A stretch of 63,400 nucleotides of DNA, filler included, from Octopus bimaculoides (Eukaryota), in assembly GCF_001194135.2 (NCBI RefSeq). It is 7 parts of 6 records of this genome, joined end to end, with 100 filler letters (N's around TTAATTAATTAA, not from the genome) between each part and the next. Parts side by side here need not be neighbours in the genome. Positions count along the whole stretch, not along the records: positions 56,969 to 60,973 come from NC_069008.1; 6 more parts are not named here. One strand, 5' to 3'. The translations under genes were made by a program, and so were the position numbers. Position 1 is the first letter of the stretch. Every line of letters begins with the position of its first letter. The notes under the pieces are model-generated. The model searched no databases. It had not been told where the DNA came from and saw only the letters and a program-made list of their open reading frames with translations. Below, piece after piece: positions 26,841-61,073 of the stretch.

Positions 26841-27457
26841 GGATCTATTTTAAAACGGGGGCCACATTTTTCATTAATGTTTTACGTAGTGTTTTTGGTA
26901 CGGAAAGACTTCCAAACTTCGTATACTTATCTATTTTGTGTTATAGAACAGAAAAATATTTTTGTATTCGAATTTATTTCATGTAAAAAATTGTCTTATT
27001 TCGATAATTTCAACCAATCACTGACAAGTATTCAGTTGTTTACATTTACTCCTTTGGCTGATTAAGCGATGTAAAGCGTATTTAATCTCCATACCTTCGT
27101 TTTATTTGCTTTTTTCATTTTAAATTTNNNNNNNNNNNNNNNNNNNNNNNNNNNNNNNNNNNNNNNNNNNNNNNNNNNNNNNNNNNNNNNNNNNNNNNNN
27201 NNNNNNNNNNNNNNNNNNNNNNNNNNNNNNNNNNNNNNNNNNNNNNNNNNNNNNNNNNNNNNNNNNNNNNNNNNNNNNNNNNNNNNNNNNNNNNNNNNNN
27301 NNNNNNNNNNNNNNNNNNNNNNNNNNNNNNNNNNNNNNNNNNNNNNNNNNNNNNNNNNNNNNNNNNNNNNNNNNNNNNTATAACACATTCTACCAGTGTT
27401 CCAAGTTTCAAAGTGTTTCGTTAATGAAAAATGTGGCCCCCGTTTTAAAAAAGATCC
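26841..27457. mobile_element. MITE with 37-bp TIRs and 8-bp TSD (Merlin-like)
   Basis: ggatctattttaaaacgggggccacatttttcattaa (26841-26877) against its reverse complement at 27421-27457 (one mismatch). TSD gagaaatg at 26833-26840 and 27458-27465. Confidence 0.85.
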
Positions 27458-27647
27458 GAGAAATGGAGTCTGTTGGATCGATAACAATATAACACTGATT
27501 ATGACCGACCCTTGAAGAATATTAAACAACGTCGATCCTACAAAGAGTTGAACTCATAACCCGAAGGAAAAAAATACTGTATTAAGTTTAGTCATACTAT
27601 CTCAAGTCTGAACATTCTTGTTCTTCCTGTTGGATGTATTGTATCTA

Positions 27648-27957
27648 TGGTGGCTCACTGGTTAAGGTGGTCGACTCACGGTTATAATGCCGTGAGTTCG
27701 ATTCCTGGTGATGCGTCGTGTCCTTGAGCAAGACACTTTATTTCACGTTGCTCTAGTTAACTTAGCTGGCAAAAATGAGTTGTACCTGTATTTCAAAGGG
27801 CAAGCTTTTTCACATTTTGTGTCACATTGAATCACCCTGAGAACTACGTTAAGGGTACACATATCTGTGGAATGCTCAGCCACTTGCACGTTAATTTCAC
27901 GAGCAGGCTGTTCCGTTGATCGGTTCGACTGGAACCCTCGTCGTCGTGACCGACGGA
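27648..27957 (+). mobile_element. tRNA-derived SINE family C. Other copies at ~4365-4632 (+), 5597-5871 (+), 34841-35150 (-), 38040-38185 (-), 41636-41873 plus 42257-42320 (-)
   Basis: gagttcgattcc..gtgtccttgagcaagacactttatttcacgttgctc..ttcaaaggg..ctcagccacttgcacgttaatttcacgagcaggctgttcc..accgacgga. Confidence 0.85.
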
Positions 27958-56868: not shown

Positions 56869-56989
56869 NNNNNNNNNNNNNNNNNNNNNNNNNNNNNNNN
56901 NNNNNNNNNNNNTTAATTAATTAANNNNNNNNNNNNNNNNNNNNNNNNNNNNNNNNNNNNNNNNNNNNGCACCACACAGTTGCTTTAAC

Positions 56990-57285
56990 ATGGTGGCACT
57001 TTTACATGGCACCGCATGTCTGCTTTTATGAGGAATGATCACAAGTACTTTTCACCACCAGAGGGATGAGTGTGATTACTTCTGCTGGGGAGTACGGGTC
57101 TTCTTGAGTACAGCGAGGTGCCAGGCATCTTGTTCTTTGTCAGATCACCTAAAAGGTTCAGCATCCTAAGTTAATTTATCAGCCCTTCCTCCCATATCTT
57201 CCTGGGTGTCCCACTTCCATGTGTTCCATCTACTTTGAGAGTTCAGCACTTCCTTATGAAGCTGTTGTCATCCAGCTCAGTTGAT
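56990..57285 (-). mobile_element. RTE LINE 3' fragment in the putative ZNF intron
   Basis: DDNSFIRKC*TLKVDGTHGSGTPRKIWEEGL..LRMLNL..TKN, same family as 29442-29945. Confidence 0.7.
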
Positions 57286-57334
57286 CTCATTAGAAATGAA
57301 TTTGTATTGTTTAAGGAACCTCAACATCTTACAC

Positions 57335-57692
57335 TGTTGTTTCTCTCTAATTTCAGAACATCAGACAACATTGACATAACAGAAGAAACATCCTCAATAT
57401 CTACCATGTTTTAAAGACTAAAAGAAAATATTATACAAAAAAGATGTACTAGATTGTTTTTTATAAATCTTTGGCAGAATTCTTGTGAAACATTTCCTCT
57501 GGAATAATATTATAAGCAAAATTTCTGAACATCACCAACTGGAGTATCAAGAAGAGTAGCTTGTGTGTTGATTAAATTTGCTAAACAAAGGTAACACTGG
57601 ACAGAAGTACAACAGTAGAAGTGCATGTAAGGAATAAAGTATAAAAACAAAAGCAATACAAATATATAAACTGGGATTTGAGAGGAAAAGTA
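57335..57692 (+). other. Probable 3' splice acceptor (AG at 57355-57356) and 5'-UTR part of the ZNF coding exon
   Basis: ctgttgtttctctctaatttcag|aacatc: pyrimidine tract, CTAAT branch-like motif and CAG, 336 nt upstream of the ATG. No transcript evidence. Confidence 0.55.
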
Positions 57693-59363
57693 ATGGAAAA
57701 GAGTGAGAAAAGTATACAATTGATTTCCCCTGAACCCATGGAAAAAGAGATGATATCATACGATTGTGATATCTGTACAAAGTCCTTCCTTCAAAAAAGT
57801 GACCTACTTATGCACAAACGTATTCATACAGGAGAGAAACTGTATCATTGTGATATCTGTGGTAAATCATTCTCTTGCAGTAGTAAGTTATCTACACACA
57901 AACGTTCTCATACAGGAGAAAAGCCATATCATTGTGATATCTGTGGAAAATCATTCTCTCGAAATAGTAACGTTACTGTGCACAAGCGTATTCATACAGG
58001 AGAGAAACCATATCACTGTGATATCTGTGGTAAATCATTCCCTCAAAGTAATCATTTAACTGAACACAAACGTATTCATACAGGAGAGAAACCATATCAA
58101 TGTGATATCTGTGGTAAATCATTCTCACAAAGTATTCACTTATCTACACATATACGTAGTCATACAGGTGAGAAACCATATAATTGTGATATCTGTGGTA
58201 AACCATTCTCTGATAATACTGCCTTAACAAAGCATATACGTATTCATACAGGAGAGAAGCCATATCATTGTAATATTTGTGGCAAACGATTCTCTAGTAA
58301 TAGATCCTTAACATCACACAGTCATACTCACACAGGAAAGAAGCCATATCATTGTGATATTTGTGGTAAACCATGCTCCAATAAGAGTTACGTAACTGTA
58401 CACAGACGTATTCATACAGGAGAGGTGCCATATCATTGTGATATTTGTGGTAAACCATGCTCTAATAATAGTGCCTTAACTACACACAAACGTATTCATA
58501 CGGGAGAGAAACCATATCATTGTGATATCTGTGGTAAATCATTCTCTCAAAGTAATACCTTAAAGGGACACAAAAGTATTCATACAGGAGAGAAGCCATA
58601 TCACTGTAATGTCTGTGGTAAATCATTCTCTCAAGGGAATCACTTATCTACACACATATGTATTCATACAGGAGCGAAACTATATAATTGTGATATTTGT
58701 ACTAAATCATTCTCTGAAAATACTACCTTAACAAAACACAAACTTATTCACACAGGAGAGATGCCATATCATTGTGATGTCTGTGGTAAACCATGCTTTA
58801 ATAATAGTGCCTTAATGTCACACAGACGTATTCATACAGGAGAGAAACCATATCATTGTGATATTTGTGGTAAATCATTCTCTCAAAGTAATACCTTAAA
58901 GGGACACAAACGTATTCATACAGGAGAGAAGCCATATCACTGTAATGTCTGTGGTAAATCATTCTCTCAAGGGAATCACTTAACTGTACATACACGTATT
59001 CATACAGGAGAGATGCCATTTCATTGTGATATTTGTGGTAAACCATGCTCTAATAATAGTGCCTTAACATCACACAGACGCATTCATACAGGAGAGAAAC
59101 AGTATCATTGTAATGTCTGTGGTAAATCATTCTTTGAAAATACTGCCTTAACAAAACACAATCGTACTCATACAGGAGAGAAGCCATATCACTGTGAATT
59201 TTGTGGTGAATCATTCTCTCATAATAGTATCTTAATTACACATAAACGTATTCATACAGGAGAGAAGCCATATCACTGTGATATTTGTGGTAAACACTTC
59301 TCTCACAATAGTAACTTAACAAAACACAAACATATTCATAATGGGGAGAAAGAAAAAGTGTAA
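57693..59363 (+). CDS. Tandem C2H2 zinc-finger protein, 19 fingers, no KRAB/SCAN/BTB domain visible
   Basis: Uninterrupted ORF. The first ATG is at 57693 ([23 protein letters not shown]), followed by 19 CxxC-x12-HxxxH units joined by TGEKPY-type linkers and a TAA stop at 59361-59363. The ORF track's TTG start at 57678 is not a eukaryotic start. Confidence 0.95.
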
Positions 59364-59749
59364 TTTCTGTAGCGTCTTATTTGCTATATGTATTTAATAT
59401 TCTTCTGTTATGCAATGGAAATTATGACTGAAGTATTTTCAAAATTTTTAGAGTTTTTCGTTTTTGCAATTTTCTCTTTCTGTTGCTTCCTTGACCATTC
59501 ATGGATTCCCTTTCCATGGTGTAAGGACCTCTGCACCAAAACCCCTCATCCTCCTGACGATCGTACATTTTATTCTTTATTGGAGACTGCATCCACAAAT
59601 TTCTGTGAATTTATTGCTTATTATTATGAGCAGTAGAAGCAGTCTTGGAAGAATGGGAGCAGTTGGTAGCTGGAAGACAAGCTAGGAAAGAGGACACTTT
59701 AGCAAGGAAAAAGTAGAGTATGTATACATATGATTTTGATCATATATAT

Positions 59750-60420
59750 ATACATGCATACCCACCTACATATGTGCAGGTGCATCTCTTTCTATACACC
59801 CCTCCCACACTCCCATCCTCCCCTCACATTATCTTGACCACCAACTAACACTTTTCTCACTTCTTTCACCCTTTCTTCACTTTTCTTTTTTTTTCACTCT
59901 TTTTATTATTATCTGTCCTTTTTCTTTTTTCCTCTTCCTGTCTTCATTTTGACCTATCGTACACATCTCTTCCCCCACCCCATCCATCCACAAATACTAC
60001 CAATATATTCTCAAATTTTCATTCACACCACAAAACCCCTTTGAATGAGCAACACAGAATCCATGGCACCACACTTAGAAATAACTAAGCACGAACTATT
60101 ATTGGAATTTACATACCATGTGCAGGAAACTTTTTACTTCTAGACACCACTTTACTCAAATAATGGAACTGCAGCTACAATGTTTTATATTTTACTTCTA
60201 CTTTCATTCTATTATTTCCCTCTATATTCCCTACAATAATTCCTTATTTGGACTCAAACATTTACCTCTATTTAACCATCTCACATCGTCTCTGATGAAG
60301 GGATATCCATAATATCCCAGAAACAGCTGTAAGACTACATCTATATCTCCTTATAAATGTCCTGAAAACTCCTCACAACCTTGACTTTGTTATCTCTTTT
60401 TGTCTAATATATATATATAT
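59750..60420 (+). mobile_element. Degenerate Penelope-like terminal region
   Basis: Pyrimidine-rich stretch and a degenerate reading frame (FTSRHHFTQIMELQL) ending in the hammerhead motif typical of Penelope-like element termini. Confidence 0.35.
60288..60335 (+). ncRNA. Minimal type I hammerhead ribozyme motif, Penelope-terminus type
   Basis: gtct-CTGATGA-a-GGGATAT-ccata-ATATCCC-a-GAAA-cagctgTA-agac: catalytic core, 7-bp stem II, palindromic stem III (ACAGCTGT), GUA cleavage triplet and a 4-bp stem I (gtct/agac). Confidence 0.6.
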
Positions 60421-61073
60421 ATACATGCTAATACAAGACCCACATTAAACTCCTCACTCATATTACTATAGAACCAAGAGTTTAACTATCGTCTGTCCAT
60501 AGCACTTAGTGTTACGAGCCACTCTTTGGGTCTTCAAGATACCAATACTTTATAAATATATATATGTCTATTTTCTTGTCTTTTATTATCATAGTCTTAT
60601 ATGTAATTATTTTCCTCTTTGTTTCTTCGATAAGTTCGTTAGGGAGGATGGCTTTAACATCAAAACTTCCCTCTTTCGAACATACCTCTGTATTGTCGCA
60701 GTGAGTCTAACTCTATGTTTAATTTGTCTTTTCTCACACCGGCTGCGGTGGCAAAATGAATTTTCTTTTTGTTGTCTTCTGTCGGGTTTACTTTTCCGTT
60801 ATTCATTTTAGCATTTATTTTTCCTTCTTCGTTCTTTTTTTTTTTTTTTTCGTTTACTGCATTTATGTGGCTTTCGTTCACATTTTCGTCATTTTGACTT
60901 GTTTTACGGTTACCTTTTGGTTAGCCTGGTCAGGGTTAGAAGACTTGTCATCCGAATTCATTTTCACACATTTNNNNNNNNNNNNNNNNNNNNNNNNNNN
61001 NNNNNNNNNNNNNNNNNTTAATTAATTAANNNNNNNNNNNNNNNNNNNNNNNNNNNNNNNNNNNNNNNNNNNN

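What the first reader, a model, noticed from the sequence alone, without database searches (positions are those of the whole stretch)
60288..60335. Hammerhead ribozyme motif on the sense strand ~925 nt downstream of the ZNF stop codon
Seen: the core CTGATGA..GAAA, a perfect 7-bp stem II (GGGATAT/ATATCCC), a self-complementary stem III (ACAGCTGT), a GUA triplet (cut after 60331) and a 4-bp stem I. Known: Penelope-like elements carry minimal type I hammerheads with palindromic stem III that are thought to cleave as dimers, and 3'-UTR hammerheads can regulate mRNAs (rodent Clec2). Inference: I saw no AATAAA between the ZNF stop and this motif, so the ZNF 3' UTR may run through it. Self-cleavage could then set or destabilise the mRNA end, giving retroelement-derived ribozyme control of a cephalopod ZNF. 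Caveat: unpaired A residues at 60299 and 60319 flank stem II and may impair activity.
Basis: partly seen in the sequence, partly recalled or inferred. Interest (0 to 1): 0.75.

Follow-up and report, generated by a model that had tools for sequence, protein, structure and literature searches.

The report
Lone minimal hammerhead motif in octopus DNA
A real hammerhead-ribozyme motif of the minimal, retrotransposon-associated kind lies 925 bases behind an Octopus bimaculoides zinc-finger gene, but it looks like a single leftover copy and nothing found here shows that it controls the gene.

Summary
It has every invariant hammerhead core base, a perfect 7-bp helix II, a 4-bp helix I, an 8-nt palindromic helix III and a GUA cleavage site.

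It is not a chance match. A relaxed descriptor found 1 hit in 40 Mb of composition-matched random sequence, and none of this quality.

I collected 29 distinct hammerheads lying just downstream of Penelope-like element (PLE) RT/endonuclease ORFs. All have one unpaired base after A9, and all have G10.1. Most have a 7-bp helix II, a short helix I and a palindromic helix III. The window motif shares these features, so A60299 is a hallmark of the class, not a defect.

It differs in three ways: an extra A60319 (0 of 29), a longer helix III palindrome, and A at position 17. A covariance model built from the PLE set scores it at noise level (8.9 bits). No PLE coding remnant, second copy or tandem repeat lies nearby.

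Three ZNF paralogs share only about 260 nt past the stop codon. Only 1 of 11 ZNF ORFs has such a motif within 2 kb downstream.

Verdict: a solo, retroelement-type minimal hammerhead, probably weak or inactive on its own. The idea that it regulates the ZNF 3' UTR is untested and has little support.

The parts
60288..60335 (+). Whole minimal type I hammerhead motif (48 nt)
   Evidence: Read directly; the only descriptor hit in the piece.
60288..60291 (+). Helix I, 5' strand GUCU; pairs with 60332-60335
   Evidence: 4 Watson-Crick pairs. Pairing probability about 0.44 in the monomer ensemble.
60292..60298 (+). Core C3 U4 G5 A6 U7 G8 A9 (CUGAUGA)
   Evidence: Invariant in the 28 PLE-linked reference hammerheads aligned here, apart from N7.
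60299..60299 (+). Unpaired A between A9 and G10.1, a hallmark of PLE minimal hammerheads
   Evidence: Present in 29 of 29 reference motifs (A 14, T 12, G 2, C 1). Described as a class feature in PMC4209133.
60300..60318 (+). Helix II hairpin: GGGAUAU / AUAUCCC with loop CCAUA and a G10.1-C11.1 closing pair
   Evidence: 7 perfect pairs; pairing probability 0.99. Helix II is 7 bp in 19 of 29 references.
60319..60319 (+). Extra A between C11.1 and G12 (or, read together with A60299, an A.A mismatch at the base of helix II); atypical
   Evidence: 0 of 29 references have a base here, and none of the 60 rows of alignment A4 does.
60320..60323 (+). Core G12 A13 A14 A15.1 (GAAA)
   Evidence: invariant in the references.
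60323..60330 (+). Palindromic helix III ACAGCUGU (A15.1...U16.1). In a monomer at most 2 bp plus an AGCU loop; in a dimer an 8-bp intermolecular helix
   Evidence: Exact palindrome. Monomer pairing probability 0.02. The homodimer minimum-energy structure forms the 8-bp duplex at -35.7 kcal/mol, against 2 x -12.3 for two monomers.
60331..60331 (+). H17 = A; predicted cleavage 3' of this base (GUA site)
   Evidence: Follows from the standard hammerhead numbering given in PMC4209133. The references have U (24) or C (5) here.
60332..60335 (+). Helix I, 3' strand AGAC
57693..59363 (+). Context: C2H2 zinc-finger ORF (556 aa, 19 fingers), Octopus bimaculoides chromosome CM046628.1
59364..59625 (+). 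Context: downstream block shared with paralogous ZNF units (about 80% identity). Homology to the paralogs stops here, about 660 nt before the motif
59742..59757 (+). Context: first copy of the 16-nt exact direct repeat ATATATATATACATGC (possible target-site duplication; weak evidence)
   Evidence: (TA)n runs are very common in these loci.
60413..60428 (+). Context: second copy of the 16-nt direct repeat, about 80 nt downstream of the motif
60444..60449 (+). Context: first ATTAAA hexamer after the ZNF stop (+1082 nt), 113 nt past the predicted cleavage site

Best explanation
The 48-nt segment is a solitary copy of a minimal type I hammerhead ribozyme of the kind carried by metazoan retroelements: Penelope-like elements (PLEs) and the non-autonomous elements they probably mobilise. 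It sits in about 5 kb of intergenic DNA that is specific to this copy of a tandemly duplicated Octopus bimaculoides ZNF unit. It most likely arrived by retroposition after, or independently of, the ZNF duplication. If transcribed, helix II forms readily. Helix III, however, can form stably only by pairing the palindrome ACAGCUGU of two copies. There is no loop-loop tertiary contact, and an extra A sits at the helix II/core junction. So a single copy in a transcript is expected to cleave poorly or not at all under cellular conditions. Shown: the motif, that it is not a chance match, its architectural match to PLE-linked hammerheads, and its absence from the paralogs. Inferred: the retroelement origin, low activity, and lack of a role for the ZNF.
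For: The motif and all invariant core bases are present. It is far beyond chance.

The reference set was built here. PLE RT/endonuclease loci carry 35 typical minimal hammerheads in 348 kb, mostly 60-260 nt downstream of the ORF end on the same strand. Across 29 distinct motifs: an unpaired base after A9 in 29/29, G10.1 in 29/29, helix II of 7 bp in 19/29, loop of 3-5 nt, palindromic helix III insert in 25/29, helix I of 3-5 bp. The window motif has all of these. The same features are published for PLE minimal hammerheads, which mostly occur as single scattered copies, show no cleavage as single motifs and show low cleavage as dimers (PMC4209133).

Folding: the hammerhead fold is -8.8 kcal/mol against a minimum-energy structure of -12.3 that ties up C3-U4-G5. 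Helix III has probability 0.02 in the monomer. The dimer gains about 11 kcal/mol through the 8-bp palindrome.

Locus: the paralogs align only to 59364-59625, continue to match each other for about 500 nt more, and homology with this locus resumes 5.8 kb downstream. Only 1 of 11 ZNF ORFs has a motif within 2 kb. Two weak, mutated hammerhead-like matches elsewhere in the Octopus loci (L004 27475-27514, 16.9 bits; L007 17343-17379, 14.3 bits) suggest that such relics are scattered in this genome.
Against: No PLE coding remnant was found. tblastn with 120 PLE proteins found nothing near the motif, nor any convincing PLE fragment in about 125 kb of Octopus loci (one weak hit, probably to a transposase part of a fusion protein). 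A PLE profile HMM searched against the six-frame translation of 59364-60973 gave only negative scores. In the reference loci the ORF ends only 60-260 nt upstream of the hammerhead.

A covariance model trained on 28 PLE-linked hammerheads scores this motif 8.9 bits (E = 0.36), tied with noise. PLE-linked hammerheads that were not used to build the model score 20-38 bits.

No second copy of the flanking sequence was seen, so membership of a repeat family is not shown.

The stems are perfect even though no coding signal survives nearby. That fits a non-autonomous source element, or selection on the motif, better than an old decayed autonomous PLE.
Confidence: 0.65

Rival explanations
1. The motif lies inside an extended 3' UTR of this ZNF and self-cleaves, alone or by pairing with a second transcript, to set or destabilise the mRNA 3' end.
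For: The motif is on the same strand as the ZNF. No AATAAA or ATTAAA lies between the stop and the motif; the first ATTAAA is at 60444. One paralog has ATTAAA about 275 nt after its stop, just past the shared block, and another has it at +410. This copy may therefore have lost the ancestral poly(A) signal at the 59625 breakpoint and read through. The stems are intact despite the lack of recognisable element remains nearby.
Against: No transcript data were available: the ZNF protein was found only on the genome record, and ORFs in the putative UTR are not on record. The motif is absent from three paralogous units and from 10 other ZNF downstream regions. It has a minimal architecture with no tertiary contacts, an extra base at the core junction, and a helix III that needs a second copy. 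Published minimal hammerheads of this class are inactive as single motifs.
Confidence: 0.06
2. The motif is one unit of a still-structured element, either a PLE with pseudo-LTRs or a retrozyme-like tandem repeat. Its partner copy is hidden in the assembly gaps that bound the piece, so it could cleave as a dimer in an element transcript.
For: The piece is bounded by 1.7-1.9 kb runs of N on both sides. Tandem or inverted PLE insertions are reported to break assemblies (PMC8557442). Reference PLE loci show hammerheads spaced about 2.5-2.6 kb apart (L030, L014) and inverted pairs (L008, L037, L047, L051). A 2-bp helix III with a palindromic tetraloop is described as typical of invertebrate retrozyme hammerheads (PMC7229834).
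Against: No PLE coding sequence lies on either side of the gaps in L001 or L003. No tandem repeat includes the motif. There is no second motif in 925 nt upstream or 640 nt downstream. Helix I is too short for the loop 1-loop 2 contacts of retrozyme hammerheads.
Confidence: 0.2
3. The motif is a chance look-alike with no hammerhead ancestry.
For: It is a single copy. Rfam hammerhead models give no hit even at E<=10, and the PLE-trained model scores it at noise level. Two low-quality descriptor hits in 348 kb of real DNA (L075, L083) show that relaxed matches do arise by chance.
Against: 40 Mb of matched random sequence gave no match with helix II >=6 bp or a palindromic helix III. The motif also carries class features that were not needed to match the core: the unpaired base after A9, the G10.1-C11.1 pair, a 7-bp helix II and a palindrome. 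The Rfam negative is uninformative, because Rfam also misses genuine PLE-linked hammerheads.
Confidence: 0.03

Closest known systems
Minimal type I hammerheads of Penelope-like elements (Cervera & De la Pena 2014, PMC4209133)
   Same: Complete catalytic core; one unpaired base between A9 and G10.1; G10.1-C11.1 pair; long 7-bp helix II; short open 4-bp helix I; palindromic helix III implying a dimeric active form; occurrence as a lone copy. All were checked against 29 PLE-linked motifs collected here.
   Different: An extra A between C11.1 and G12 (0 of 29). The helix III insert is 6 nt, against 2-4 nt. H17 is A, against U or C. No RT/GIY-YIG ORF or pseudo-LTR lies next to it. The PLE-trained covariance model does not recognise it.
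Type I hammerheads of metazoan retrozymes / satellite repeats (Cervera & De la Pena 2020, PMC7229834)
   Same: Type I topology. [quoted passage not shown] The axolotl HHR_Amex2 family has a mismatch (U.U) at the base of helix II, comparable to the A.A reading here.
   Different: It is not in a 150-450-bp tandem repeat. Helix II is 7 bp rather than 4 bp. Helix I does not extend beyond 4 bp, so there is no room for loop 1-loop 2 tertiary contacts.
3'-UTR hammerheads of rodent Clec2 genes
   Same: A hammerhead on the sense strand downstream of a coding region, which could in principle cut an mRNA.
   Different: From my knowledge, the Clec2 ribozyme is split into two parts within a demonstrated 3' UTR, is conserved among orthologues and is active. 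None of those properties is shown here, and the paralogs lack the motif.

Membership tests
Hammerhead ribozyme, type I | Conserved core C3 U4 G5 A6 N7 G8 A9 ... G12 A13 A14, A15.1-U16.1 pair, H17 not G | tested here: met
   CUGAUGA at 60292-98, GAAA at 60320-23, U60330, A60331.
Hammerhead ribozyme, type I | Three helices around the core, with open ends at helix I | tested here: met
   Helix I 4 bp; helix II 7 bp; helix III is a palindrome that forms 2 bp in a monomer or 8 bp in a dimer. In the monomer ensemble helix III is rare (probability 0.02), and the minimum-energy structure pairs C3-G5 elsewhere.
Hammerhead ribozyme, type I | Helix II abuts the core directly (10.1-11.1 pair next to A9 and G12) | tested here: not met
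   A60299 and A60319 flank helix II. The 5' one is usual in PLE motifs; the 3' one is not.
Hammerhead ribozyme, type I | Match to a curated Rfam hammerhead covariance model | tested here: inconclusive
   No hammerhead hit at E<=10 in the 4-kb or the 121-nt search. The same models also miss genuine PLE-linked minimal hammerheads.
Hammerhead ribozyme, type I | Site-specific self-cleavage | not testable with these tools
   Needs in vitro transcription and cleavage assays.
PLE minimal hammerhead | Unpaired base between A9 and 10.1; G10.1-C11.1; helix II 6-8 bp; helix I 4-5 bp; palindromic 15.2-16.2 / loop 3 | tested here: met
   All are present. Frequencies in the reference set are given; the published description is.
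PLE minimal hammerhead | Located in the pseudo-LTR of a PLE, next to an RT/GIY-YIG ORF or its remnant | tested here: not met
   No PLE similarity by tblastn with 120 PLE proteins or by profile HMM on the six-frame translation of 59364-60973. The paper notes that most genomic copies are solo.
PLE minimal hammerhead | Member of a multi-copy consensus family within the genome, with covariation | not testable with these tools
   Only about 125 kb of Octopus DNA could be fetched. It holds no second copy and two weak, mutated look-alikes.
PLE minimal hammerhead | Significant score against a covariance model built from PLE-linked hammerheads | tested here: not met
   Model R2 gives 8.9 bits, E = 0.36, and skips helix II through a local end. 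PLE hammerheads not used in training score 20-38 bits. The model comes from one group of PLE loci, none known to be cephalopod.
Metazoan retrozyme hammerhead | Embedded in 150-450-bp tandem repeats | tested here: not met
   Tandem Repeats Finder finds only (AT)n, T-runs and short units, none including the motif. Assembly gaps limit the view.
Regulatory 3'-UTR hammerhead (Clec2-like) | Lies within a demonstrated mRNA 3' UTR | not testable with these tools
   No transcript contigs were found. The only relevant evidence is indirect: no strong poly(A) hexamer lies before 60444.
Regulatory 3'-UTR hammerhead (Clec2-like) | Conserved with the gene across paralogs or orthologs | tested here: not met
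   Three paralogs share only 59364-59625 with this locus. 0 of 10 other ZNF downstream regions has a motif. Orthologs could not be retrieved.

The most novel reading that the evidence does not exclude
This ZNF copy lost its ancestral poly(A) signal (ATTAAA about 275 nt past the stop in a paralog) at the 59625 breakpoint. It now reads through a captured retroelement hammerhead to ATTAAA at 60444. The ribozyme, acting alone or by pairing with a second transcript through the ACAGCUGU palindrome, then trims or destabilises the mRNA. That would be a newly arisen ribozyme-controlled 3' UTR in the expanded octopus ZNF family.
Probability: 0.05. Interest if true: 0.7.

Novelty: new member of a known kind. 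Interest (0 to 1): 0.22.

Why it matters
Minimal hammerheads tied to Penelope-like elements are already known to be scattered in thousands of copies through many animal genomes. One more copy in an octopus adds little by itself. I found no paper in the searched library that specifically reports hammerheads in cephalopods.

The motif would matter only if it were shown to lie in the ZNF mRNA and to cleave. That would be a rare case of a ribozyme domesticated into an invertebrate mRNA.

Two practical points came out of the work. Rfam's hammerhead models do not detect this class at all, so genome annotations will miss it. And the unpaired base after A9 is a signature of the class rather than a defect.

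Tried and rejected
- Rfam cmscan on 4 kb and on 121 nt found no hammerhead. Controls later showed this is uninformative.
- A protein search with the full-length ZNF was swamped by vertebrate ZNFs and returned no octopus orthologue.
- An N-terminal ZNF query returned only short octopus ZNFs. They served to fetch about 125 kb of Octopus DNA, but no orthologous locus was identified.
- Looking up the two small ORFs in the putative 3' UTR, in the hope of finding transcript contigs, returned nothing on record.
- No supplementary files with published hammerhead sequences were held.
- The PLE protein probe was a motif sequence I composed from memory. It worked, but none of the listed hits was from Octopus. 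One PLE look-up returned no DNA because the gene range was too long.
- Model R1 was built with a mis-typed helix I and was discarded.
- Model R2 does not recognise the motif.
- tblastn, a PLE profile HMM and blastn of the flanks against PLE proteins and loci all found nothing.
- No tRNA-like, SINE-type sequence is present.
- The (TA)n/ACATGC direct repeats around a 655-bp segment were considered as a target-site duplication. I kept this only as a weak lead, because (TA)n is everywhere in these loci.
- Three R2 hits downstream of ZNF paralogs in L003 looked interesting but are noise repeated by paralogy: no helix II, and the GAAA overlaps a hairpin.
- I did not scan the viral or prokaryotic genome collections, because they cannot hold cephalopod DNA.

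Full report
**1. The observation**

The piece (window 56969-60973) reads, on the + strand from 60288: GTCT CTGATGA A GGGATAT CCATA ATATCCC A GAAA CAGCTG T A AGAC.
- The C2H2 zinc-finger ORF (57693-59363, 556 aa, 19 fingers) ends 925 nt upstream.
- No AATAAA or ATTAAA lies between the stop and the motif. The first is ATTAAA at 60444.
- CTGATGA occurs once in the piece.

**2. Is it chance?**

I wrote a descriptor that allows helix II of 4 bp or more, helix I of 4 bp or more, G-U pairs, 0-1 unpaired base on each side of helix II, and any helix III insert up to 10 nt.
- In 40 Mb of first-order Markov sequence with the piece's composition it found one hit. None had a palindromic helix III or a helix II of 6 bp or more.
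- Rough arithmetic of my own puts a match of the observed quality below 0.1 expected in a whole 2.7-Gb genome.
- Real DNA is less random. A looser version (helix I of 3 bp or more, one mismatch allowed) gave two poor-quality hits in 348 kb of unrelated loci and none in about 125 kb of Octopus DNA other than this motif.
- The motif therefore descends from a real hammerhead lineage.

**3. Where it is**

The ZNF protein is encoded on Octopus bimaculoides assembly GCA_001194135.2, chromosome CM046628.1. Octopus proteins on the same contig confirm the organism. The piece is bounded on both sides by assembly gaps of 1.7-1.9 kb. The motif is at about 15,352,306-15,352,353 of that record.

**4. What class of hammerhead**

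Cervera & De la Pena 2014 (PMC4209133) describe minimal type I hammerheads in the flanking repeats of Penelope-like elements (PLEs). Their features:
- helix II of 7-8 bp and helix I of 4-5 bp;
- one unpaired base between A9 and 10.1, and a conserved G10.1-C11.1 pair;
- palindromic 15.2-16.2 or loop 3;
- mostly solo copies scattered in the genome;
- no detectable cleavage as single motifs and only low cleavage as dimers or trimers.

To test this with data rather than memory, I composed a PLE RT/endonuclease motif probe. It hit thousands of real PLE proteins (RVT_1, DUF8422, HTH_animal, GIY-YIG). I then fetched PLE loci: L008, L009 and 80 metagenome contigs.

The same descriptor found 37 hits in 348 kb. 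Thirty-five were typical, mostly 60-260 nt downstream of the ORF end on the coding strand. Some were in 2.5-2.6-kb tandem units or in inverted pairs. Across 29 distinct motifs:

| Feature | PLE reference set | Window motif |
|---|---|---|
| Unpaired base after A9 | 29/29 (A 14, T 12, G 2, C 1) | A60299 |
| G at 10.1 | 29/29 | G |
| Helix II length | 7 bp in 19/29 | 7 bp |
| Helix II loop | 3-5 nt in 26/29 | 5 nt |
| Base between helix II and GAAA | 0/29 | A60319 |
| Helix III insert | 2 nt (23), 4 nt (5), 6 nt (1); palindromic in 25/29 | 6 nt, palindromic |
| H17 | U (24), C (5) | A |
| Helix I | 3-5 bp | 4 bp |

So the window motif shares the whole architecture.

It differs in three respects: the extra A60319, a 6-nt palindromic insert, and H17 = A.
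- A60319 is also absent from all 60 rows of the model alignment.
- Read with A60299, A60319 would give an A.A mismatch at the base of helix II. The abundant axolotl family HHR_Amex2 has a U.U mismatch at that place.
- A 2-bp helix III capped by a palindromic tetraloop is described as typical of invertebrate retrozyme hammerheads (PMC7229834).

**5. Tests that failed**

- A covariance model built from 28 PLE-linked motifs (R2) scores the window motif 8.9 bits, E = 0.36, level with noise. The alignment jumps over helix II. PLE hammerheads that were not in the training set score 20-38 bits. The two insertions are what the model cannot absorb. The training set also comes from one group of PLEs of unknown, probably non-cephalopod, hosts.
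- Rfam gives no hammerhead hit. It also misses the best genuine PLE hammerheads, even in a 121-nt search, so that result says nothing.
- No PLE coding remnant lies near the motif. tblastn with 120 PLE proteins and a PLE profile HMM on the six-frame translation of 59364-60973 were both negative.
- There is no nucleotide similarity to PLE loci, no tandem repeat, no tRNA-like sequence, and no second copy of the flanks in the Octopus DNA I could reach.
- The stems are perfect while no coding signal survives within the 60-260 nt where a PLE ORF would end. An old decayed autonomous PLE is therefore less likely than a non-autonomous carrier, an element with a long untranslated tail, or some selection on the motif.
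- Two weak, mutated look-alikes elsewhere in the Octopus loci hint that such relics are scattered in this genome. They are L004 27475-27514 (CTGATGA-A-GGCTG...CAGCC-AAAA-CG-T, 16.9 bits) and L007 17343-17379 (CTGTAGA core, 14.3 bits). Each is only borderline.

**6. Folding**

- As a monomer, helix II is essentially always formed (probability 0.99).
- The hammerhead fold is -8.8 kcal/mol. The minimum-energy structure is -12.3 kcal/mol and pairs C3-U4-G5 with the CAG of the palindrome.
- Helix III has probability 0.02 in the monomer.
- Two copies are predicted to join through the 8-bp ACAGCUGU duplex: -35.7 kcal/mol against -24.6 for two monomers.
- Helix I cannot be extended beyond 4 bp, so there is no place for the loop-loop contacts that make natural hammerheads fast at cellular Mg2+ (general knowledge of the ribozyme).
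- Together with the published low activity of this class, a lone copy is expected to cleave poorly, if at all. This is inference.

**7. Relation to the ZNF**

- Three paralogous ZNF units in the same cluster align to this locus only from the stop codon to about 59625 (about 80% identity). Two of them continue to match each other for about 500 nt more. Homology with this locus resumes 5.8 kb downstream (L003 11249-12000 against 26992-27743, 93%).
- The motif therefore lies in about 5 kb of DNA particular to this copy, about 660 nt beyond the shared block.
- Of 11 distinct ZNF ORFs with at least 1 kb of readable downstream sequence, only this one has a hammerhead within 2 kb.
- One paralog has ATTAAA about 275 nt after its stop, just past the shared block. 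Another has ATTAAA at +410 and AATAAA at +471. This copy has none before +1082.
- No transcript evidence could be obtained.

**8. Verdict**

The motif is a genuine minimal type I hammerhead whose architecture matches the PLE-associated class, with one atypical extra base. It is best read as a solo retroelement-derived copy in locus-specific intergenic DNA (confidence about 0.65).

Membership of the PLE class rests on architecture only. Adjacency to a PLE, family membership and a model-based match were either not met or not testable.

The proposal that it controls the ZNF mRNA has no positive support beyond the lack of an earlier poly(A) hexamer. I give it about 5%. The finding is a new member of a known kind and of modest interest.

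Noticed in passing
window 59701-59774: Weak Rfam matches to mir-297, mir-466 and mir-787 on both strands (best 29.5 bits against a gathering score of 90). They fall on a TA/TG-rich imperfect palindrome next to a (TA)n run, and similar mir-297 hits occur in unrelated PLE loci. Most likely a low-complexity artefact.
   Followed up: partly
window 59742-59757 and 60413-60428: A 16-nt exact direct repeat, ATATATATATACATGC, flanks a 655-bp segment with the hammerhead about 80 nt from its 3' end. This could be a target-site duplication of a retroposed insert, and PLEs are reported to prefer microsatellite targets. But (TA)n is abundant in these loci.
   Followed up: partly
window 59364-59625; L003 26043-26287 and 22037-22205; L001 2652-2754: The first ~260 nt after the stop codon are conserved among tandem ZNF paralogs (about 80%). 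One paralog has ATTAAA right after this block, which is likely the ancestral 3' UTR and poly(A) region. This copy breaks off at about 59625.
   Followed up: partly
L001 5579-7002 (- strand), same as L003 123-794: ORFs of a retroelement gag-like protein with a CCHC zinc knuckle lie between two ZNF genes, upstream of the assembly gap that precedes the window's piece.
   Followed up: no
L002 1502-1930 (+) and 18797-19762 (+): A LINE-type reverse-transcriptase C-terminal fragment, and an ORF annotated with a DDE_Tnp_IS1595 transposase domain, in another O. bimaculoides ZNF locus.
   Followed up: no
L004 27475-27514 (+); L007 17343-17379 (+): Two degenerate hammerhead-like sequences in O. bimaculoides, with PLE-style features (A after the core, GGCTG/CAGCC stem, ...AAACGT) but with core mutations (G12 to A; A6 to U). 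Their scores are borderline (16.9 and 14.3 bits).
   Followed up: partly
L040 3-44 and 2645-2686; L060 1864-1906: PLE-linked hammerheads with core UUGAAAA instead of CUGANGA. This is the U3-A8 covariation reported for Schistosoma PLEs, recovered here from metagenome contigs by the covariance model.
   Followed up: partly
L008 4769-4805 (-) and 8105-8141 (+); L030 2852 and 5452; L014 4229 and 6742; L037, L047, L051: PLE loci show identical hammerheads either in inverted pairs flanking an ORF and a truncated inverted ORF, or in direct repeats 2.5-2.6 kb apart. This matches the published pseudo-LTR and inverted-copy structures.
   Followed up: partly
L011 2751-2794 and seven other PLE loci: Rfam release 15 hammerhead models give no hit at E<=10 on clear PLE-linked minimal hammerheads, which score up to 52 bits with a purpose-built model. 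This class is invisible to Rfam-based annotation.
   Followed up: yes
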